From Epiperipatus broadwayi (Eukaryota > Animalia > Onychophora): 64,000 bases of DNA. Of this stretch, positions 20,560 through 63,507 are shown piece by piece (position 1 is the stretch's first letter; the number at the start of each line of letters is the position of its first letter). The notes under the pieces are model-generated. The model ran no database searches and was not told the DNA's origin. It was given only the letters and a program-made list of their open reading frames with translations. The translations under genes were made by a program, and so were the position numbers. The stretch lies in contig JAQFVV010000010.1 of NCBI GenBank assembly GCA_028023455.1, positions 8,184,001 to 8,248,000 of the forward strand. The letters run 5' to 3'.

Positions 20560-22310
20560 AATCACATCATCCCCACCATCCAGAGGACAAGAAAGTGAAA
20601 ACCCATACTAATGCCTGCAGCACCCATGTCCCAGCCCCCCTCCTAAGGACTAGGAACCAGGCCTTGGGGTATTTCCAAAGTTCAAATTCTCTCATCCAAT
20701 GCCCTTACTAATCCCCACAGCAACCAGATCCCTTCCAAAATCCAGGCTTGTGAGACTTTCCAAGCATCAGAACCTGCCATCCAGATGGCAGAGATGAGTG
20801 ACACAGCAGCCCCAATTTAAAGTTTAAACCATAGTAGAACTCTCTGGCCTGAGTCACCCAAGCATGAGATTCTCTCATCTTCACAGCCAAGACAAGAAAT
20901 GTTGCAGCACTAATCAAAAATGTAAATCTCACATGCTTATATCATATGCCATCTACAGATTATCAGATAGTCTAATAACCAACCTATGAATCATATAGAG
21001 AACAAAGAGACTAAAACCACAATGCATCGTGTCATCTCCACTGCCCTGAAGATGAGAAAGATGAAACCCGTACTAATCCCCATAGCACTTCACATCCCAG
21101 CCCCCCCCATAAGAACCAGAGTTCAGACCCCAGTATCCCAAATTCCAGACTCTCTCATCTGAAGCTCATATTAGAATCCAATACACCCACATTCCAGCCC
21201 CCCTCCAAGATCAGGAAGCAAGCCCTGGGAGCTCTCCAAGCAACAAACTCAGTCTTCAAGACCGCAAAGATGAGTGACCCAGTAGCCTCAATCCAATGTT
21301 CAAATCACAGTTGAACTCTTCGGGAACTTTAGTTTTGTCCATCATGTTTCAGCTTCCAGACAGCTTATAAAAAATTAGAAGTCTTAATCCATGAGGTCCT
21401 TAACTATTGGTAAAAATCAAATGATAAAACTAGAAGCACAATCCATATAATGAGGTACAACTGTTAACAATTCAATGTCATAATAATTGCTAAGTGCAAA
21501 TCTTCAGGATTTCCAATGCCTTGCATAAAAAATTCATTATTACTTTCCAAAATCAAAAACTTTAATGTATATGTAATAACCAGATGCTTGCATTATGTGT
21601 TATACCACAATATAATTCTAGATTTATAGAGCAATCAAAGATGTACATACAGTAATGTATCCATTAAAATCACATATTGAATAGTGTCCATCATGTTTCA
21701 GCACCCTGATAACCTATGAAAACCAGAAGCACTAATGCATATAGTCAAATGTTAAAATTATCGATTTGCACAGTTCTGCATTCAATATAGAAAAAAACGT
21801 TTAATATAGAATGTAAGGTTGAATAATTAAGCAACAAATGTTCAGATACAGTCTAAAACAATTCACTATAGTAGAAAAGAATCAAGTCAAATCTCAGGTC
21901 TAAACTGCAAGCACAAAACTGCAATGAATAACGTTGTCATTTTTAACAAATGAATGAGCCATCCAAATCTGGTAAAAACATTTTAAAAGACATAGTCAAT
22001 GATCCAACATCAAATGCATGGATAAAAGATAAAGCAACACCTGAAATAAATGATCAGGTACAATGAGAAACAATTTACTATTGTGGAAAAATTCTTTCTT
22101 TAAAAGTAAAATCTCAGGTTTAAAAAGCAAGCATTAAAGCTTAAATGAATAATGCTGCTATTGCTAACAAATAAATGAGCTATCTAATTCTGGTAACTAT
22201 CCCCAGAGCACCTTTCCCCAGCTCTGCCTCATATAAAAACTAGGATTTAGGCTCTCAGGGGTCCTCCCAACAATCAGACACTCTCACCCACGTCAGCAAA
22301 GCTGCCCTGA
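20560..22310 (+). repeat. Relatively GC-rich unclassified repeat with internal degenerate direct duplications
   Basis: A ~470-bp period unit (20560-20850 vs 21025-21320), a duplicated gtccatcatgtttcagc (21338, 21687), a duplicated aatctcagg...tctggtaa (21890, 22110), and an aactaggatttaggc motif at ~22240 shared with 60300-60420 and 60920-61040. Confidence 0.65.
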
Positions 22311-28942: not shown

Positions 28943-29141
28943 ATATACAAATCAATATATATATCAAAATACAGTACAATTTATATAAATTATATTCTTT
29001 TAGAAGTACTTTCGACTATACACTTTGTAGTCTTTATCAACGTTATATAGTTGATAAAGACTACAAAGTGTATAGTCGAAAGTACTTCTAAAAGAATATA
29101 ATTTATATAAATTGTACTGTATTTTGATATATATATTGATT

Positions 29142-29148
<7 letters not shown>
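28943..29148. repeat. Perfect 99-bp inverted repeat with 8-bp spacer
   Basis: 28943-29041 is the exact reverse complement of 29050-29148 (checked base by base). Spacer gttatata. Confidence 0.97.

Positions 29149-29208
<60 letters not shown>
29144..29208. repeat. (TA)n microsatellite at the RTE 3' junction
   Basis: Uninterrupted TA run. Confidence 0.98.
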
Positions 29209-29210
<2 letters not shown>

Positions 29211-29219
29211 TCATCATTA

Positions 29220-32207
29220 TTAACCATTATCAATCCACTGCAGGATGAAGGTCTCTCCAAGTTTAATCCATCTTCTCCGATCTTTAGCTTCTCTTCTCCA
29301 CATCACCCCTACACATTTTCTTATTTCATCCATCCACCTTACATGTGGTCTCCTTCTAGGTCTTTTACAATCTCTTGGAATCCAGGTTAAAATTTCAATT
29401 GTCCATCTATTATCATCTCTTCTAGCAATATGTCCAGCCCAACTCCACTTCAATCTTTTAATTTTTTCAATGAGGTCAGTAACACCTGTTTGTTCTCTTA
29501 CCCATACATTGCGTTTTCGATCTCTTCTTGTTACTCCCAACATACATCTCTCCATACTTCTTTGAGTGGTCTGAAGTCTCTGTATTGATCTTCTATTAAG
29601 TATCCAAGTCTCAGATCCATAAGTAAGAACTGGTAAAACACATTTGTTAAAAACCTTTCTTTTCAAACACATAGGCATATTTCCTTTTAATATCAAGTTA
29701 TTTCTACCAAAAGCACTCCAACCAAGTTTAATTCTATGATTAATTTCCTCTATTATGTTTCCATCTGTATTAATAATCTGACCAAGGTATTTGTAACTGT
29801 TAACTTCTTCTAATTCATCATAATCAATCTTTATTTTCATATTTTGAGCAAATCGATTAAACATTACTTTAGTCTTTTTAACATTTATCTTTAGTCCTAC
29901 TTTCCTACTTTCATCTGATAACTCCTGCAACATTTCCTGCAGCTCGAAAGCATTATTTGCAAAAACAACTACATCATCTGCGAAATCTAAATGACTTAAA
30001 TAATCTCCATTTACTTTCACTCCTTTAGTTTCCCATTTTAATCCACAAAATACTTCTTGCAGCACTGCTGTAAAAAGTTTTGGAGATATGGAGTCACCTT
30101 GTCTTACACCTTTCTCAATGTTGACTTTCCCAGTATCATTATGTAATCTAATTGTTGCTGTTGCATTTTTATAAATATTCTTTAAAATATGACAATATCC
30201 TGGATCTATACCTTGATGATCCAATGCTTTAATCACTGAAGAAATGTTTATAGAATCAAATGCCTTTTCATAATCTACAAATCCAAAACATAATGACAAC
30301 TCATATTCATTTGTCCTTTCTATAACTTCTCTCAATACTTGAATATGATCTACTGTACTAAAACCACTTTTAAATCCAGCTTGTTCTCTTGGTTGGTGAA
30401 AATCCAAGGTTCTCTGTAGACGAGTTGTAATTATCTTGGTAAAAATTTTATATAAAACTGATAAAAGGCTGATAGGTCTGTAATTTCTAATATCTTCTTT
30501 ATCACCTTTTTTAAATATTAATATTATTACTGCATTCTTCCAATCATCCGGTACATCTTTATCATTTAGACATTTGGTATATAACTTTGCTAATATTTTT
30601 TCTGTTTCTTCACCTGCTTCTTTTAATATATCAATTATAATTCCATCATTACCGGGAGCCTTTCCTTTTTTCATACATTTAATTGCATTTCTCACTTCTT
30701 CATTTAAAATTCTGGGCAATTCGGAAGATGTAATAGATATAGGAGGTACTTGTTCTTTATTACTATATAATTCTTGATAAAAATCTTCTACCAATTTCAT
30801 AATGTCATCCCTCTTTTTAGTAATAATTCCATCTTTTTTCCTTATTGCAGATATAAATTTCCTACCAATATCAAAATGTTGTTTTACATTCTTAAGACTT
30901 TTATTTTCTTCTACAGCTTTTCTTGCTAGTTCACAGTTATACTTTCTTATATCATTTTCAACTCTTTTCCGCACCATTTTACAAAATTCGAGATATTCAA
31001 TTCTTTTTAATGCATCATTCTTGCATATCTTCATATTCCTTCTTTTCTTCATAAGTTCTCTAGTCTCAGTAGAAATTTTATTAGTCAATTGCTGCTTTTT
31101 TCTACCAGCTATCTTTGTTGCAGTTTTTAAAAGTGTATCAGTTATTTTTATATTAATTTCATTCAAATCTGAATCATGTTCAAAATCTACTAATACTTGA
31201 AACCGATTTGTAAGTTCTAATTTAAATTCATTAGAATGTTTCTGAAGATTAGGAATATCAACTGTAAATATGGTTTTTCTTAATAATTTTTGTCTCTCTA
31301 GTTTTACATTAACATGTATCTTACCCCTTACTAATCGATGATCACTTCCTGTGTTAAATTTATTAAGAACATTACAATCTTGAAATATGTATTTCCTGTT
31401 AGTCAAAATATAATCCAATTCTGCTGTACCTTCATTTGGATGCTTCCATGTCCATTTCCTTCTAACATTTTTCTCAAAAAAAGAATTCATAATATAAAGT
31501 TTTTCCTTCTCTGCAAACTCCACAAGTCTATGTCCTCTGTCATTTCTATTACCATAACCAAAATTACCTACAACACTTTCATCTTTCATTTGTTTACCAA
31601 TTCTAGCATTAAAATCTCCCATAACAATTTTAAAATGTTGTTTACTCTGATCAAAAGCCTTTTGTACATCCATATAAAAATCTTCTACTACTTCATCACT
31701 GTGAGAACTTGTTGGGGCATAAACCTGAATTATCTGCATTTGATATCTGCTATTAAGTTGTATAACTAATCTTGCCACTCTGTCTGATACACCATCAATC
31801 TCCACAATATTGTTCTTCCACTTTTTATTTATAATGAATCCTACTCCACTTGTATTTCCAATATTTGTGCCTTTATAATAGAGCATATGTCCACTTTTTA
31901 AATCAATTGTCTCTTCACCTTTTCTTCTAACTTCACAAAGTCCAATAATATCCCATTTAATATAAGAGAGTTCTTCTTCTAATTCTTGCAATCTTCCTTC
32001 ACTTGAAAGTGATCTGCAGTTGTAAGTACCTAAATAAAAAGTCGTCATCAAATGGCAGCCTGGGTCCGCCTCCAGGATATTCTTAGCACCCTCCGCCTTC
32101 GGCCACCAACGGCTGCCTTGGTTGGTGACTTTACAGCCTCCTGGGATTAAGGGCCATGCTTTATTTTTGTCTGTCATAATTGTATAATTGGGAAAAATCT
32201 TTATCAT
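29220..32207 (-). CDS. RTE ORF: AP-like endonuclease plus reverse transcriptase, 995 aa, uninterrupted
   Basis: APE motifs [33 protein letters not shown]; RT motifs [25 protein letters not shown]; RTE-type C-terminus [11 protein letters not shown]...RW. Confidence 0.97.
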
Positions 32208-32336
32208 TTACACAAACATTCATTCTGCCTTATCAGGCACTGAGAAGAAAGACCATGGTGTTTCTTGATCTTAAACTCAAAGGTAAAATGCCAATAAACT
32301 TACCACGCTGGCTAATGCGTGTTGGTGAGCAGCCCA

Positions 32337-32497
32337 TCCATGTTCGTATACTATATGAATAAACATATAGTAATAACAGCTGCAACGACAAGAACGTATG
32401 GAGTGGACATTAGGAATTTGCCCTGCTCGGTTCCTTTAAGGCCTCCAAGAGGAATCAAAGGGTCTCCTTTCAGTTAATAGCAAACTCCTTTCTGCAG

Positions 32498-32499
<2 letters not shown>
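32337..32499 (-). ncRNA. HDV-like (CPEB3-type) self-cleaving ribozyme in the RTE 5' UTR
   Basis: P1 GGCTGCA(32499-32493)/TGCAGCT(32384-32378) with G1.U; 90-nt J1/2; P2 TCCAT/ATGGA; P3 ACG/CGT; L3 TTCTTGT; G32377 for P1.1; P4 TACTATATG/CATATAGTA (9 bp); J4/2 A-C(32346)-GAA. G1 coincides with the element's 5' boundary. Confidence 0.85.

Positions 32500-32561
<62 letters not shown>
32500..32561. repeat. (TA)n microsatellite at the RTE 5' junction
   Basis: Uninterrupted TA run of ~62 bp. Confidence 0.98.
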
Positions 32562-32564
<3 letters not shown>

Positions 32565-32765
32565 TGTAATTATAACTGTCTACTGCAGGATGAAGATGTT
32601 TTCCAAATTTAATTCAGTTTCTCTAATTTATAGCTTTTTTCCTCATCATGTTGCAAATGTTCATATTTCATTAATCTCTATCATGGTATTTTTTGAGCTC
32701 TTTACAAATTTTGGGATTCTGTTTAAATTTTAGTTATTCATCTAGTACCATCTTATCTAACAATA
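32562..32765 (-). mobile_element. Old 5'-truncated RTE 3'-end fragment
   Basis: ctactgcaggatgaagatgttttccaaatttaattc... aligns with the RTE 3' end at 29225-29430; heavily diverged. Confidence 0.75.
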
Positions 32766-32850
32766 TTTTATTTATACAAATTATAATAAAAATAACATTT
32801 CTTTTATGTAATATGCACACACACAAATATCAGATTATAACTTAATTTAC

Positions 32851-33004
32851 CTGCACTGTTGTTTCCACCATAACCATTTTTACCTTCTGGTGATAGATCT
32901 AAGTTCTGACCATCACTTAGATTAATATTCGATAGTCTGGAATATGACATTCCACCTCCACCACCGGCCACAACAAGAAGAGTAATTTTTCCTTTTTTAT
33001 TTTT
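32851..33004 (-). CDS. Alk: Internal exon of an ALK/LTK-type receptor tyrosine kinase (glycine-rich extracellular domain)
   Basis: tatacag|AAA AAT...AGT GCA G|gtaaatt; 154 bp, phase 0 to phase 1. Encodes KNKKGKITLLVVAGGGGGMSYSRLSNINLSDGQNLDLSPEGKNGYGGNNSA(G), resembling ALK ...VPLIIAAGGGGRAY...GLNGNSGAA(G). Orthology is recognised from memory; a stand-alone Gly-rich-domain gene cannot be excluded. Confidence 0.75.
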
Positions 33005-33800
33005 CTGTATATAACATACAATCAAATTATAAAAATTAGTGAGCTGTTATATAAAAATAATTAATATTATATATTGATGTATTATAAAGTATATGTATAA
33101 TAATACTGATATGAGTTCCTTAAAGTTTGTAATGTGTCTAAACATTAAGAATACAAAATAATATGCATCTTAAAAAATATAAATAATGAAAAACTTTTTT
33201 GAAAATAATAAAATGTTATTGATTAATTATAATATTGAATCATTTTTTCTATTTACATTAAAATCAGATTTTAATGATATAATAGAATATATTCTAAACA
33301 TCATTAGAACTTGCGATTTTGTAATGATATTTTAATACAATACCAAAACTGTTGCTGCTTTTCTGTGATAATTTTATAAACACTGAGAAAAAATTGACAT
33401 ACAATTTAGTAATGTATATATCAAAACAAAAATTCTCAGGAACTAAAGATATAAATGCCATATTATCTCATTTCATCTGTATATAATTTATTATATCAAA
33501 AATATACACCGACATTCTGATTGGGTCACTCTGATCTCTACATAGCATCTTTAATTATGTATCATATAATATAACCTTTTATTTGCAATAAATATGCTTT
33601 AAAATGTTGATGTATAAAAATTTTGAAAGTTATATAAAAAAAAAAAGCAGGTAAAAGTAATAAAAAAAAAACAAAAAAATTATTTAGATTAACGATTTTT
33701 TAAAAAATATTTAAATAGATAATTTACATGTATCATCATATTCGTTGACACAATCTGACCTTTTAAGCATCTCAATGGCTTCTCTTATCTTACATTATAG

Positions 33801-34075
33801 ATGACCTGGGCCCATATCGTGGAATGAGAGTGCTGCCGATACGTGCTGCTTAACTCTATTAATGTGGTCATATCTTCTAAAAGTGATGATTTCTCATATT
33901 CACATAAGAAGCTTTACAGATGTACATGAAGTTTACAACATTTTATATGCCATCTGTAAAACTTCTTACGTAGATTGACCAATCATCACATTAGTCCTAA
34001 AAATATAAACATATTAATGCAGTTAAGCAACACTCATCATCATTAACATCACTCCATGCTATTGACACAGGTCAT
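33801..34075. mobile_element. ~275-bp imperfect hairpin (MITE-like)
   Basis: atgacctg...caggtcat ends; internal arms gctgcttaact / agttaagcaac and aagaagctttacagatg / catctgtaaaacttctt. Confidence 0.7.
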
Positions 34076-34427
34076 AGTATTAATTTCTCTAATCCCAGAA
34101 TCCTTTTCAAATGTGTCACTCTCCTCCAACATCAGAGCAGAGAAGCCATTGGGGTTCTTAAAAAGCCAGACCTATCAACAATCATGATGATGCATGTTAA
34201 TTACCTTTTACTTGAACCTTTTTTTAAAAGCCGTTAATCTAAATAGTTTCTAATTTTTATTATTTCTATCTGTTTTCTATTGATATTATTGTATATACAC
34301 TAATGTTTACAATGCTTCTACAACTGTTCTTTTAATATTCATTACCCAGTTAATGTGACCCAGTTAAAATACCAGTATATATTTTTAATACAATAAGTTA
34401 TCCATGGATGAACCCATGTAATATGTC

Positions 34428-34430
<3 letters not shown>

Positions 34431-34479
<49 letters not shown>

Positions 34480-34480
34480 C

Positions 34481-34510
<30 letters not shown>
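34431..34510. repeat. Interrupted (TA)n microsatellite
   Basis: Two TA runs separated by tgacatat. Confidence 0.95.
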
Positions 34511-34514
<4 letters not shown>

Positions 34515-34856
34515 AACCATTGATATCTGAGTGCGGCCTATATTAGTTATATTGAAACATGGCATAAAAATAAAAAGATAGAAAAAAAGTACAAACTACT
34601 TTATTATGTGCCATTGGAATATACTGCCTAAAATAAAGTTGATATATGCATTTGACAATAATATTTATTGTGACTGTGAAGAGCAATCTATGCATAAACA
34701 TATATGAGTTATTAAAGATTTGGAGAACAATGTCTATGTTTGTACACTCACATATGTCATAAATTAGAGAAATTGCTCACGAGAAAAAAATAAAAAAGTA
34801 TTAATATACATTTTCCTTGTATTGTATATTTATGGGTAATGTTATCAATCACTTAC

Positions 34857-34882
34857 CTTGTAATATATGAGCAGAAATGAAT
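34857..34882 (-). CDS. Candidate 26-nt micro-exon of the ALK-like gene
   Basis: ttttatttttctcttttttacag|ATTCATTTCTGCTCATATATTACAAG|gtaagtg. The frame xAT-TCA-TTT-CTG-CTC-ATA-TAT-TAC-AAG (SFLLIYYK) ends in phase 0, compatible with the exon starting at 33004. Confidence 0.4.
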
Positions 34883-36008
34883 CTGTAAAAAAGAGAAAAA
34901 TAAAATGCTAGTGATTGTGAATAAATTTTAAAATGCGAATCGATTTAAAATGCATAGTTTATAAAATTTCAAGGCATTTTGAGATTTTTTTGATTTTATC
35001 CGTTCTGAATTGATTTATAAATAAAATCTTGTTGATTCCTATAATAAATATAACGTTAAATTCAAATTTAAGTTTAAAAATTAGGAATTAATGATATCCG
35101 TAAAATTAGAAATAAAAAAAAGAAAAGTCGAAGAAGAATTTTATATCTTCCTGCATTGGAACGGGAGTAGATAAAGAAAAGAAAGCAAACAGGTATTTCT
35201 TTTTTCTTTCATTATAAAATATTATAATATTGTATACAAGTTTATTTCCCTCACATGTTTTAGAAAAGGGCAATGGAACATGTTTTACTCTGGACCTGAT
35301 ATTTTAGAATGGTCTACATTAAGGTTTGAGTGACAGATAATGAAAAAATATATGGATGGTTTACATTATGGATTAATTGGTGGCAAATGATAAAGACAGG
35401 AGATAGAAAGATAACAGAGATGTATAAAAAGGGGCCATTCAAAATTCATACAGAATGCAGACATTCATTCTGATGTTTATTTTGTTGATAATATTCAATG
35501 AGAAAGCTATTCTAATTGCAAGTGCAGTTTGTATTGAAATAGTTGCTAGAGAAGGAAATTGCAATGCCTAGGACAACAGGTATTGAACACAATAAAATGA
35601 TTTTCAATACTCATAGTCATAACAGCTATAAGAATGTTTTATTTCAGTAGTCTATTATTTACTATACAGGGCTACGCAACAAGTAACATTAGTCGAATGA
35701 CCCTGAGTATGCAGTCCAATCTAGTAAATAATGTGGAACGAGATTGCTATAACATCTAACATGTCAATAAATCCATGCTACTAAATTACTGAAGACTTAT
35801 TGATATTCTACATGCAATATATCCACATACTGATATAATTACAATTCAAGTATCCAGCATATAAGGGGAAGAAATTTACTTTTCAAAGAGAGTTATGAAG
35901 ACGACTGTAATTATGGAAAAAAAAGATATATAAAAACTAATGATTTAGGACTTTAGATATTTTGATTGGTAAAATATTAACATATATTAATTATTGTGAT
36001 ACGTTATA

Positions 36009-36250
36009 TTTTATATCTGCAGCTGGATTCATTAATATAGACTTAAAACTAAAAATATATTAATTGTTGTGGTAAATGTTATTTTATATCTGTGGTTGGA
36101 ATTGCTAATATAGACTTAAAATTGAAAATGTATTAACTGTTGTGACACTTTCATTTATAACTAGATTTGGAATCATGAGTATAGACTTAAAAACTAAAAA
36201 TATATTAATTGTTGTGATGTGCTTGATTTTATATCTACATTTGGTATCAC
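36009..36250. repeat. Tandem repeat, ~73-bp unit x ~3.3
   Basis: ttttatatct...tatagacttaaaactaaaaatatattaattgttgtg recurs at ~36009, 36082, 36153 and 36227. Confidence 0.85.
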
Positions 36251-36759
36251 GATGTAAACAACTTATGTATGTTTTGTTAATAAATGGTTAAATTATTGTT
36301 TTGTCAATTCAGTTGTTTGCTTATAATTAAGTTAAACATTATAACTTCAACACACATATGTTAGTTTATAAATCATCCACAACTCTGTGATAATAGGTGA
36401 AATACTGTGAATACGATGGAGGGTTATGATAATAATTGGCAGTGATGATTATTGTTATTTCATTAGTAAACTTTCTCTGTTGAGAAGGTTGAATTCAGTC
36501 ACTATAATTTGGTAGACTTCAGGCATGTGATCTAATACACATATATATGGGCTATGAAACATTGTAAAGCAGGTCCTTTATTCTATGTAAATTCAAACTC
36601 TACCATAGTAACATTAGCAGCAGTTTTACTTTTTGGTTTCCATTATAACTTCATAATAATAATGTTGTATACATGATTATAAGTCATGAATGATTCAAAT
36701 CCACCTTTTTATAGTATTTCATGGAATTTAAAAAAACAATTAATATATAGGGTATATGA

Positions 36760-37130
36760 GCACAGACTTTCACACAATCCACCACTTTCCACTCTATCTC
36801 ATAATACTAATACACATGAACACATATATGTTGAAAAGATAAATAATCACCAATATATGTATTTCATGCTAAACCAGCAATCATCAGTTGGTCCAGATTA
36901 CCATCTCCACACATATATGCTGTAAGTACTCAGATATACATTAAGATAGCTAATCTTCATACTTTAATGGACAGGCTTCAATCTACTCCACACTCCAACT
37001 CTTCAACTGTCCATCCAATTGAAAATCTGATGATGGAATGCTCAAAGGCCACCCTGAGGCCGAGATTATTGTCATATCCATGTTGACCTAAGGTCAATCT
37101 GACCCCTCATGTACAGGACATAATTCATTT
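36760..37130 (-). mobile_element. 3' end of a PLE (possibly Neptune-like) with a hammerhead-bearing tail
   Basis: Homologous to 42840-43150. A decayed IEA..IK..LN-like GIY-YIG end lies immediately upstream of the hammerhead. Confidence 0.6.
36844..36900 (-). ncRNA. Type I hammerhead ribozyme with intact catalytic core
   Basis: taatc-tgg-accaa-CTGATGA-t-TGCT-ggttt-AGCA-t-GAAA-tacata-TA / ttggt-gatta. Stem I is 5+5 bp with a UGG bulge, stem II is 4 bp, and the AUA triplet predicts cleavage at 36854/36853. Confidence 0.85.
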
Positions 37131-37639
37131 AGTACATATACAAGGGATGGACAGACATCTCTACTATGCAATAAAAACAATTAAGTAAATTCTTTTTTTA
37201 TTTTGACTGGAAAAAGTTAATGACTCTTTTCAGTTCATCTTAATTCTTTCAAAAACAACTTTGTAGGATTTTATCAATGTATTTAATTAAAAAAATCTTA
37301 ATCTAATTAAAAAGAAAGTGGAATTTTATAATTATTGGTACTATGCACATACTCTACTATGTAGTTGTATGCCATGGGACTGTAACAATCTCAGTATATA
37401 TGATTTACTATCTTCATCTAATTTTTTTGTATCATTGGTTATGGATTCAAACCTGACTGTAGAAGTTAAAGATCATACTGGATTAGTTTTACAATGTATA
37501 TATAATAGAAAATCATATAACATTAAAATACTAACTATAAACAAATATATACTAATATTTATTTATGACCTTTGTTTCATTTATTAATAAATAGACCTCA
37601 AGTGAAATTTACTAGATACAAACAATATATATATACAAA

Positions 37640-63408: not shown

Positions 63409-63507
63409 GTCAAGCGTTAGTGGCCTAGTGGTTAGCATAGTTGCCTTCCAAGCAGCTGGCCCTGGTTCGCTTCCTGGTCAATGCATTTGACACATAAAAA
63501 TATATAT
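63409..63507 (+). mobile_element. Retroposed tRNA-Gly(TCC) copy / SINE
   Basis: 63414-63485 closely resembles metazoan tRNA-Gly(UCC) (GCGTTAG...GTTGC-CTTCCAA-GCAGC...GGTTCGCTTCC) but has acceptor- and T-stem mismatches and T-loop A58 changed to C. GTCAA leader, TTTGACACAT-A tail, and 13-bp TSD atatcacagcctt at 63396-63408 and 63508-63520. Confidence 0.85.

What the first reader, a model, noticed from the sequence alone, without database searches (positions are those of the whole stretch)
32337..36900. Two potentially active ribozymes flank the ALK-like exon on the host sense strand
Seen: the ALK-like exon, the HDV-like ribozyme (about 350 nt downstream of the donor at 32850) and the intact-core hammerhead (36844-36900, about 3.8 kb upstream of the exon) are all on the minus strand. 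Known: the intronic CPEB3 ribozyme cleaves its host pre-mRNA co-transcriptionally. Inference: the kinase pre-mRNA could be cut on either side of this exon. The RTE may lack its own promoter and excise its RNA from host read-through, while influencing splicing or attenuating the receptor transcript.
Basis: inference. Interest (0 to 1): 0.75.

Follow-up and report, generated by a model that had tools for sequence, protein, structure and literature searches.

The report
One credible ribozyme, one decayed, flank exon
An exon of an ALK/LTK-type receptor gene has a young, intact RTE jumping gene with a convincing hepatitis-delta-type self-cutting RNA 350 bases downstream and a decayed hammerhead inside an old repeat 3.85 kb upstream; both kinds are already known and any effect on the host gene is untested.

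Summary
The exon (33004..32851) belongs to an ALK/LTK-type gene. The genome's only match to the glycine-rich-domain family lies 75 kb upstream on the same strand and matches solved ALK and LTK structures.

The HDV-like ribozyme is credible. It is the first 167 nt of an intact RTE (995-aa ORF) and identical to the family consensus. All 30 sampled genomic copies begin at the same G, right after a (TA)n run. The full double-pseudoknot anatomy is present. Covariation could not be tested.

The hammerhead is a real relic, not a chance motif. It sits in a solo copy of a ~434-bp hammerhead-bearing repeat (retrozyme or Penelope-like type). Its core is intact, but this copy lost the helix III palindrome needed for dimer cleavage. 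Its subfamily has U.U in place of G10.1-C11.1. It is probably inactive here.

So there is one plausible cutter, not two. RTEs released from intronic read-through transcripts by HDV-like ribozymes were described in 2009-2011, so this is a new member of a known kind. The scan has already noted this RTE ribozyme many times elsewhere in this genome. The contig is not human.

The parts
32851..33004 (-). Exon of an ALK/LTK-type receptor gene (glycine-rich domain); acceptor AG at 33006-33005, donor GT at 32850-32849
   Evidence: Open 51-codon frame with LLVVAGGGGG and GYGGNNSAG motifs. Protein-atlas features: 20 of 30 nearest clusters carry ALK_LTK_GRD, score 0.94. Same-strand exon 75 kb upstream scores 26.7 bits against PF12810 (cut-off 24.5) and matches ALK/LTK PDB chains at about 1e-7. 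This exon alone gives no Pfam, PDB or meaningful phmmer hit.
32500..32561 (.). (TA)31 microsatellite directly upstream of the RTE 5' end; half of the insertion target
   Evidence: TRF. All 30 sampled copies have a (TA)n run of variable length at this junction, with unrelated DNA beyond it.
32333..32499 (-). HDV-like self-cleaving ribozyme, predicted cut between 32500 and 32499. P1 32499-32493 / 32384-32378 (G.U at the cut site). J1/2 hairpin 32492-32407. P2 32402-32398 / 32341-32337 (possible extension to 32406 / 32333). P3 32397-32395 / 32387-32385. L3 32394-32388 (UUCUUGU). P1.1 C32392-G32377. P4 32372-32364 / 32357-32349. Catalytic C at 32346 within CGAA.
   Evidence: Descriptor scan. Best Rfam match in this stretch is drz-agam-1, in the same register, at 17.4 bits, below its gathering score of 37. 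MFE z-score -2.94. Identical to the family consensus. Exact shared 5' end.
29207..32499 (-). Full-length RTE-clade non-LTR retrotransposon: 292-nt 5' UTR, ORF 32207..29220 (995 aa, APE endonuclease plus reverse transcriptase), 3' UTR of about 13 nt (TAATGATGATGAT)
   Evidence: ORF. Pfam RVT_1, Exo_endo_phos and Exo_endo_phos_2. 438 homologues at 42-60% identity, including Bombyx 'endonuclease-reverse transcriptase'. 8 differences from the consensus in the first 1840 nt. 3' end.
29127..29208 (.). (AT)n run at the RTE 3' end; other half of the target, or a simple-repeat tail
   Evidence: TRF; sequence.
36741..37174 (-). Solo full-length copy of a ~434-bp non-coding hammerhead-bearing retroelement (retrozyme or non-autonomous Penelope-like type), with a 7-bp target duplication ATTGTTT at 37181-37175 and 36740-36734
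   Evidence: More than 2000 candidate copies in the genome, top hits at 93-95% identity. Constant 3' end, variable 5' truncation, head-to-head and linker-joined head-to-tail pairs. No ORF next to the copies.
36844..36900 (-). Type I hammerhead motif. Helix I 36900-36896 + 36892-36888 with 36853-36849 + 36848-36844 (UGG bulge at 36895-36893). CUGAUGA 36887-36881. Helix II 36879-36876 / 36870-36867 with U.U at 36880/36866. GAA 36865-36863. Helix III remnant AUACAUAU 36862-36855. Cut after A36854.
   Evidence: Sequence. Family alignment. 42 of 54 copies keep the core and 20 keep the UACGUA palindrome; the window copy has UACAUA. No Rfam hammerhead hit at E<=10. Fold z-score -0.42.

Best explanation
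The stretch is one exon and parts of its two flanking introns, in an ALK/LTK-type receptor gene transcribed from the minus strand. Each intron has received a retroelement in sense orientation.

Downstream: a very young, intact, full-length RTE inserted into a (TA)n microsatellite 350 nt after the 5' splice site. Its first 167 nt fold into an HDV-like double-pseudoknot ribozyme with an 86-nt hairpin in J1/2. The ribozyme should cut just 5' of G32499. Any transcript that reads into the element, including the host pre-mRNA, would then release an RTE RNA beginning at its exact first base. That is why every full-length copy starts at the same G. This is the known way that RTE, R2, R4 and L1Tc elements process their 5' ends.

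Upstream: a solo copy of a ~434-bp non-coding retroelement whose type I hammerhead is of the weak-helix-III, dimer-dependent metazoan type. This copy keeps the catalytic core but lost the helix III palindrome by CpG decay. It shares its subfamily's U.U in place of G10.1-C11.1, so it most likely cleaves poorly or not at all.

Shown: the anatomy, the exact 5' ends, the family membership of both elements, and the host strand. Inferred: catalysis, read-through transcription and any consequence for the host.
For: Host strand and identity:
- PF12810 has a single genome hit, at C10:8292568-8292714 on the minus strand.
- That exon scores 26.7 bits against a 24.5 cut-off and matches ALK and LTK PDB chains at 8.5e-8 to 5e-7.
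- Protein-atlas features of the window exon point to ALK_LTK_GRD.

RTE:
- 995-aa ORF with endonuclease and reverse-transcriptase domains and 438 homologues.
- 30 of 30 sampled copies at 98-99% identity start at the same G after a variable (TA)n run.
- The window copy differs from the consensus at 8 of 1840 positions, none of them in the ribozyme.

Ribozyme anatomy:
- P1 of 7 bp with G1.U.
- P3 of 3 bp; 7-nt L3 (UUCUUGU) with U at position 1 and G at position 6.
- P1.1 C-G; P4 of 9 bp; CGAA in J4/2; P2 of 5 or more bp.
- Best Rfam match in the 186-nt stretch is the HDV-like drz-agam-1, aligned in the same register.
- 11 of 20,000 shuffles give a hit starting at nt 1; MFE z-score -2.94.

Literature:
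- RTE ribozymes cleave at the element's 5' junction (PMC3774820).
- RTEs lack promoters and are transcribed from introns (PMC6765202).
- J1/2 loops of 216-498 nt occur in R2 ribozymes (PMC3774820).

Hammerhead:
- Repeat family.
- The palindrome self-duplex is -6.5 kcal/mol for the consensus and +1.0 for the window copy.
- Metazoan type I hammerheads with weak helix III need a second copy nearby, and single motifs showed no detectable cleavage (PMC4209133).
Against: - No covariation support for the HDV-like fold. All retrievable copies are 98-99% identical. A covariance model of the core found nothing significant in 59 loci holding RTE relatives at 24-56% protein identity or elsewhere in the held DNA.
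- No Rfam model reaches its gathering score.
- My descriptor is permissive: four chance loci turned up in the 128 kb of both strands.
- A shared 5' end could also come from an internal promoter.
- The kinase exons were not located: no PF07714 match on this part of the contig among the 147 candidates scored, and downstream DNA could not be fetched.
- The hammerhead's subfamily grew to many copies with U.U at 10.1/11.1, so that pair may be tolerated and some activity cannot be excluded.
Confidence: 0.75

Rival explanations
1. Both ribozymes are active in the host pre-mRNA, so the receptor transcript is cut on both sides of the exon, with effects on exon inclusion or transcript level.
For: Both motifs are on the host sense strand with intact catalytic cores. 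The hammerhead's helix I (5+5 bp with a bulge) and 4 bp of helix II can form. The subfamily amplified despite U.U at 10.1/11.1.
Against: The window copy's helix III cannot form as a monomer (2 bp plus a 4-nt loop), and its dimer duplex is +1.0 kcal/mol. No second usable hammerhead is nearby: the other window copies have broken cores. Single motifs of this class showed no detectable cleavage, and dimers only low activity, in vitro (PMC4209133). No Rfam hammerhead hit.
Confidence: 0.08
2. The motifs are real, but neither matters for the host. The gene may be little transcribed where the RTE is active, the RTE may use its own start, or cleavage may be slow enough that splicing of the tethered nascent RNA proceeds normally. 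The arrangement would then be neutral intronic clutter.
For: Both elements belong to families with more than 2000 candidate copies scattered over the genome, so landing in a long intron is expected by chance. The exon frame and splice sites are intact. Reviews state that a function for intronic ribozymes in pre-mRNA processing remains unproven (PMC6765202).
Against: The ribozyme copy is identical to the consensus of a recently active family. It lies in sense, with at least 29 kb of window DNA downstream of the RTE showing no further glycine-rich exon. A cut would therefore long precede synthesis of the 3' splice site. From my own knowledge, not checked here: fast ribozymes placed in introns can abort co-transcriptional processing (Fong, Ohman and Bentley 2009).
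Confidence: 0.4
3. The HDV-like fold is a structured 5' UTR that only resembles a ribozyme, for example an internal promoter or translation element. The constant 5' end would then reflect a fixed transcription start.
For: No covariation could be obtained. Rfam scores are sub-threshold. The descriptor has chance hits.
Against: Every defining element sits in the canonical order and spacing, starting at nt 1: G.U at the cut site, 3-bp P3, 7-nt L3 with the conserved U, C and G, P1.1, and CGAA with the catalytic C just before P2. RTE ribozymes with this placement are published (PMC3774820, PMC6765202).
Confidence: 0.1

Closest known systems
HDV-like ribozymes at the 5' ends of non-LTR retrotransposons (RTE, R2, R4/Dong, L1Tc, Baggins; Webb 2009, Ruminski 2011, Eickbush 2010/2013)
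   Same: Double-pseudoknot fold that begins at the element's first nucleotide. Cleavage at the 5' junction frees the element from an upstream co-transcript. Large J1/2 insertions are tolerated. RTEs are described as promoter-less and transcribed from introns (PMC3774820, PMC6765202).
   Different: Only the particular sequence, the 86-nt J1/2 hairpin and the (TA)n target context. No activity data for this family.
drz-agam-1 (Rfam RF01787), HDV-like ribozyme of Anopheles gambiae
   Same: Best Rfam match. It aligns P2, P3, L3, P1', P4, J4/2 and P2' in the same register as my hand fold.
   Different: 17.4 bits against a gathering score of 37. The model's P1 5' strand cannot reach across the 86-nt J1/2 insert. 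Not a family member by Rfam's threshold.
CPEB3 intronic HDV-like ribozyme of mammals
   Same: HDV-like fold in sense in an intron of a protein-coding gene, able in principle to cut the pre-mRNA co-transcriptionally.
   Different: CPEB3's ribozyme is a conserved single-copy host sequence. This one is the 5' end of a young multicopy transposon with no sign of host conservation.
Metazoan type I hammerheads of Penelope-like elements and non-LTR retrozymes (Cervera and de la Pena 2014; de la Pena 2020 review)
   Same: Type I topology; helix II of 4-5 bp; short helix III with a palindromic loop that implies a dimeric active form. Carried on an abundant non-coding repeat forming partial tandems and inverted pairs (PMC4209133, PMC7761336).
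   Different: This subfamily has U.U instead of the highly conserved G10.1-C11.1. The window copy is solo and its palindrome is broken. No link to an autonomous Penelope element was shown here.
Lepidopteran RTE elements with simple-repeat tails (Tay 2010, PMC2887409)
   Same: [quoted passage not shown] Bombyx RTE proteins are among the homologues.
   Different: Here (TA)n flanks both ends, which suggests insertion into existing (TA)n tracts and not only tail slippage.

Membership tests
HDV-like self-cleaving ribozyme | Nested double pseudoknot: P1, P1.1, P2, P3 and P4 in canonical order | tested here: met
   Descriptor scan finds P1 7 bp, P3 3 bp, P4 9 bp and P2 5 bp in order, starting at 32499. 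The Rfam drz-agam-1 alignment uses the same register.
HDV-like self-cleaving ribozyme | Cleavage site immediately 5' of P1, with a G.U wobble closing P1 | tested here: met
   G32499 pairs with U32378. This G is the first base of 30 of 30 sampled copies.
HDV-like self-cleaving ribozyme | Catalytic C in J4/2, and conserved L3 residues (U...G reverse wobble, C pairing with the G after P1) | tested here: met
   C32346 lies in CGAA directly before P2'. L3 is UUCUUGU with U1, C3 and G6, and C3 pairs with G32377. The conserved L3 G/U pair is described in PMC3774820.
HDV-like self-cleaving ribozyme | Compensatory changes that keep the helices in diverged relatives | tested here: inconclusive
   Sampled copies are 98-99% identical. 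The model R1 found no homologue in 59 loci of RTE relatives or in other held DNA. Further sampling of the genome was blocked.
HDV-like self-cleaving ribozyme | Reaches an Rfam gathering score | tested here: not met
   No hit at gathering thresholds. Best is drz-agam-1 at 17.4 of 37 bits. The 86-nt J1/2 insert and the unmodelled pseudoknot explain much of the shortfall.
HDV-like self-cleaving ribozyme | Self-cleavage activity | not testable with these tools
   Needs an in vitro transcription and cleavage assay.
Hammerhead ribozyme, type I | Conserved core: C3-A9, G12-A14, A15.1-U16.1, H17 | tested here: met
   CUGAUGA at 36887-36881, GAA at 36865-36863, A36862/U36855, A36854.
Hammerhead ribozyme, type I | Helix II closed by G10.1-C11.1 | tested here: not met
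   U36880 and U36866 face each other. 33 of 42 core-intact copies share this stem. Older copies show G-C or G.U. G10.1-C11.1 is 'highly conserved' (PMC4209133).
Hammerhead ribozyme, type I | Helix III stable as a monomer, or palindromic for a dimer | tested here: not met
   Family consensus AUACGUAU self-pairs at -6.5 kcal/mol. The window copy AUACAUAU gives +1.0. As a monomer it has only 2 bp plus a 4-nt loop.
Hammerhead ribozyme, type I | Matches an Rfam hammerhead model | tested here: not met
   No hammerhead family at E<=10 in 36800-36940 or in 31800-37200.
RTE clade of non-LTR retrotransposons | Single ORF with APE-type endonuclease followed by reverse transcriptase, and a very short 3' UTR ending in simple repeats | tested here: met
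   Pfam Exo_endo_phos, Exo_endo_phos_2 and RVT_1 in one 995-aa ORF. 13-nt 3' UTR plus (AT)n. Matches the description in PMC2887409. No tree was built.
ALK/LTK receptor tyrosine kinase | Glycine-rich domain (Pfam PF12810) | tested here: met
   Upstream same-strand exon: 26.7 bits against a 24.5 cut-off, and ALK/LTK PDB chains at about 1e-7. Window exon: atlas features only, with no Pfam or PDB hit on its own.
ALK/LTK receptor tyrosine kinase | Tyrosine-kinase domain in the same gene | tested here: inconclusive
   No PF07714 match near this locus among the 147 of 850 candidates scored. Downstream DNA could not be fetched.

The most novel reading that the evidence does not exclude
The consensus-identical HDV-like ribozyme lies in sense 350 nt after a 5' splice site, in an intron that continues for at least 29 kb beyond the RTE. 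It may act as a natural co-transcriptional attenuator of the single-copy ALK/LTK-type receptor gene, possibly as a presence/absence polymorphism. More generally, the many near-identical RTE copies of this genome would impose ribozyme-mediated transcript cutting on every gene they enter in sense. That should leave a measurable orientation bias, and a difference between copies with an intact and a decayed catalytic C.
Probability: 0.15. Interest if true: 0.55.

Novelty: new member of a known kind. Interest (0 to 1): 0.3.

Why it matters
Taken alone, this is an ordinary example of two described classes: RTE 5' HDV-like ribozymes, and dimer-type hammerheads on non-coding retroelements.

Its possible value is as a natural test case. 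An intact ribozyme from a recently active family sits in sense, close to a splice donor, in a very long intron of a single-copy signalling receptor gene. Sister copies have lost the catalytic C by CpG decay (4 of 30). Comparing such copies could show whether transposon ribozymes actually damage host transcripts, which reviews still list as unproven.

Tried and rejected
Checks that led nowhere:
- I first took the hammerhead for a chance motif. I rejected that once the genome search showed a repeat family with a proper consensus hammerhead.
- The 51-aa exon alone gave nothing useful. The PDB search found nothing and Pfam found nothing, even at E<=10. phmmer against 1.84 billion proteins returned two spurious repeat-protein hits.
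- Glycine-containing frames at 20.6-21.2 kb and 62.6 kb are not exons of this domain.
- The PF07714 search of the genome showed no kinase exon near the locus.

Covariation attempts:
- 438 RTE protein homologues were found.
- 80 metagenome loci were fetched.
- My descriptor found no hit in the 5' region of the closer relatives (L062-L064) and only weak, chance-like hits in two distant loci (L072, L132).
- The covariance model R1 found none either, nor any diverged copy in the held genome DNA.
- Inspecting the 5' UTRs of L062-L064 by eye gave no convincing fold.

- The genome search with the RNA model failed twice.
- Two papers were not held: Ruminski 2011 and Lunse 2017.

Full report
**What the window is.** It is AT-rich eukaryotic DNA, 22-35% G+C, from contig C10 of a 5.6-Gb genome. 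I do not take it for human. It carries RTE and hammerhead-repeat families with thousands of candidate copies. Its ALK/LTK-like exon is only distantly similar to the human proteins.

**Host gene.**
- On the minus strand a 154-nt exon runs 33004..32851. AG precedes it at 33006-33005 and GT follows at 32850-32849.
- Its 51 full codons read KNKKGKITLLVVAGGGGGMSYSRLSNINLSDGQNLDLSPEGKNGYGGNNSA.
- Alone it is too short and too biased for sequence searches. The PDB search and Pfam found nothing. phmmer against 1.84 billion proteins gave two spurious hits to repeat proteins.
- Two other lines place it in an ALK/LTK glycine-rich domain. Protein-atlas features put 20 of the 30 nearest clusters in ALK_LTK_GRD, at score 0.94. 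A whole-genome search with PF12810 found a single match, at C10:8292568-8292714 on the minus strand, 75 kb upstream in the gene's direction.
- That upstream exon reads ISAMGASGGIGVTNPQISRGAFVHATFNLTEDENIYILVGQEGESSCPP. It scores 26.7 bits against a 24.5 cut-off. It matches solved LTK and ALK ectodomains at 8.5e-8 to 5e-7.
- No other glycine-rich frame is in the window. The flanking introns therefore look to be tens of kb long.
- The kinase exons were not found, and downstream DNA could not be fetched. 'Kinase pre-mRNA' therefore rests on the domain family, not on a kinase domain that I saw.
- I searched the exons one at a time by reference and built no joined model.

**The RTE.**
- A 995-aa ORF (32207..29220, minus strand) carries an APE-type endonuclease and a reverse transcriptase.
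- It has 438 homologues at 42-60% identity, including Bombyx 'endonuclease-reverse transcriptase'.
- The 3' UTR is only TAATGATGATGAT, followed by (AT)n. This matches the description of lepidopteran RTEs with simple-repeat tails (PMC2887409).
- Thirty genomic copies at 98-99% identity all begin with the same GGCTGCAG. Each follows a (TA)n run of variable length, and the DNA beyond that run is unrelated between copies.
- The element therefore has an exact 5' end at 32499 and sits inside a (TA)n tract.
- The window copy differs from the majority consensus at 8 of its first 1840 nt, none of them in the first 167. It is young and intact.

**The HDV-like ribozyme.** Numbering the RNA from G32499:
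- P1: nt 1-7 with 116-122 (GGCUGCA/UGCAGCU, G1.U122).
- J1/2: nt 8-93, an 86-nt hairpin of -29.5 kcal/mol.
- P2: nt 98-102 with 159-163, perhaps extended to 94/167.
- P3: ACG/CGU.
- L3: UUCUUGU.
- P1.1: C108-G123.
- P4: nt 128-136 with 143-151.
- J4/2: CGAAC, with the catalytic C at nt 154 (window 32346).

L3 has the U at position 1 and the G at position 6. That matches the conserved reverse-wobble pair described for this class (PMC3774820).

Rfam finds nothing at gathering scores. When only 186 nt are searched, the best match of all 4227 families is the HDV-like drz-agam-1, at 17.4 bits and E = 0.26. It aligns P2, P3, L3, P1', P4 and J4/2 in the same register as my fold. The shortfall is expected, because the model cannot bridge the J1/2 insert.

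My descriptor is permissive: it gives four chance loci in the window's two strands. A hit starting exactly at nt 1 arose in only 11 of 20,000 dinucleotide shuffles. The pseudoknot-free fold has a z-score of -2.94.

J1/2 loops of 216-498 nt are documented in R2 ribozymes, and RTE ribozymes are reported to cleave at the element's 5' junction (PMC3774820). The anatomy is therefore within the known range.

Among 30 copies, 23 keep every modelled pair and the catalytic C. The lesions in the rest are mostly CpG decay, including C154 to T in four copies.

Covariation is missing. My descriptor found no convincing fold in the metagenome-derived RTE relatives and the covariance model found none. Further sampling of this genome was blocked.

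**The hammerhead.** I first expected a chance motif, because CTGANGA-N8-40-GAAA occurs four times per strand in the window. It is not one.
- Positions 37174..36741 are a full-length solo copy of a ~434-bp non-coding repeat, with a 7-bp target duplication.
- The family has more than 2000 candidate copies; the best 40 are 93-95% identical to the window copy over the 181 nt around the hammerhead. Copies share a constant 3' end and vary in 5' truncation. They often form head-to-head pairs, or head-to-tail pairs joined by a shared ~39-bp linker. No ORF lies next to them.
- The family consensus reads: helix I of 5+5 bp with a UGG bulge, CUGAUGA, helix II UUGCU-GGUUU-AGCAU, GAAA, UACGUA, UA, then the cut.
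- AUACGUAU is self-complementary at -6.5 kcal/mol. This is the weak-helix-III, palindromic-loop design of metazoan type I hammerheads. That design is thought to work as a dimer when a second copy is nearby. Single motifs of this class gave no detectable cleavage, and dimers only low activity (PMC4209133, PMC7761336).
- Older copies show G-C or G.U at 10.1/11.1. This subfamily has U.U, where G-C is normally highly conserved.
- The window copy also has CG changed to CA in the palindrome (UACAUA), which destroys the dimer helix (+1.0 kcal/mol).
- It is solo, and the other family remnants in the window have broken cores.
- No Rfam hammerhead model matches, and its fold is unremarkable (z = -0.42).
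- I rate its activity in the pre-mRNA as unlikely.

**Interpretation.**
- What does not hold is the symmetry: there is one credible cutter, not two.
- Whether the HDV-like cut matters to the host is open. Intronic ribozymes have no proven role in pre-mRNA processing (PMC6765202). From my own knowledge, unchecked here, slow cleavage can be tolerated through exon tethering, while fast cleavage aborts processing.
- Because the 3' splice site lies tens of kb away, a reasonably fast cut would precede it by minutes. An attenuating effect is therefore plausible but unmeasured.

**Novelty.** Both ribozyme-element pairings were described in 2009-2014. The scan's own notes show 48 entries for this RTE ribozyme and 29 for the hammerhead repeat in this genome. 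Those are leads, not evidence. I class this as a new member of a known kind and of modest interest.

Noticed in passing
window 28943-29148: Perfect palindrome: 99-nt arms, 100% complementary, 8-nt spacer. It lies immediately beyond the (AT)n at the RTE 3' end. It could be a foldback or MITE-like element, or a by-product of the insertion.
   Followed up: no
window 32500-32561 and 29127-29208; loci L002-L030: The RTE family appears to insert into (TA)n microsatellites. All 30 sampled 5' junctions follow a (TA)n run of variable length, and the window copy has (AT)n at its 3' end too. The sample is biased, because my query included 21 nt of TA repeat.
   Followed up: partly
loci L032-L060 (e.g. 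L046, L050, L037): Copies of the hammerhead repeat cluster together. They join head-to-tail through a shared ~39-bp linker, or head-to-head at variably 5'-truncated ends. This pattern is typical of Penelope-like or retrozyme-type integration.
   Followed up: partly
window 35982-36249: A 73-bp unit repeated 3.7 times (75% matches) in the intron between the exon and the hammerhead repeat.
   Followed up: no
window 33662-34264: Imperfect nested inverted repeats (33662-33717 with 34209-34264; 33801-33876 with 34000-34075). They suggest a ~600-bp MITE-like foldback element in the same intron.
   Followed up: no
window 63414-63485 (+): A tRNA-like sequence just above Rfam's gathering score (29.7 against 29 bits). 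It may be a tRNA-derived repeat or a pseudogene.
   Followed up: no
loci L017, L023, L025, L027: Ribozyme lesions in RTE copies are almost all CpG decay, including loss of the catalytic C (ACGAA to ATGAA) in 4 of 30 copies. These are natural 'dead ribozyme' controls.
   Followed up: partly
window 20600-21300 (-): A G+C-richer stretch with internally repeated motifs and short glycine-containing frames. It looks like a repeat, not an exon.
   Followed up: partly
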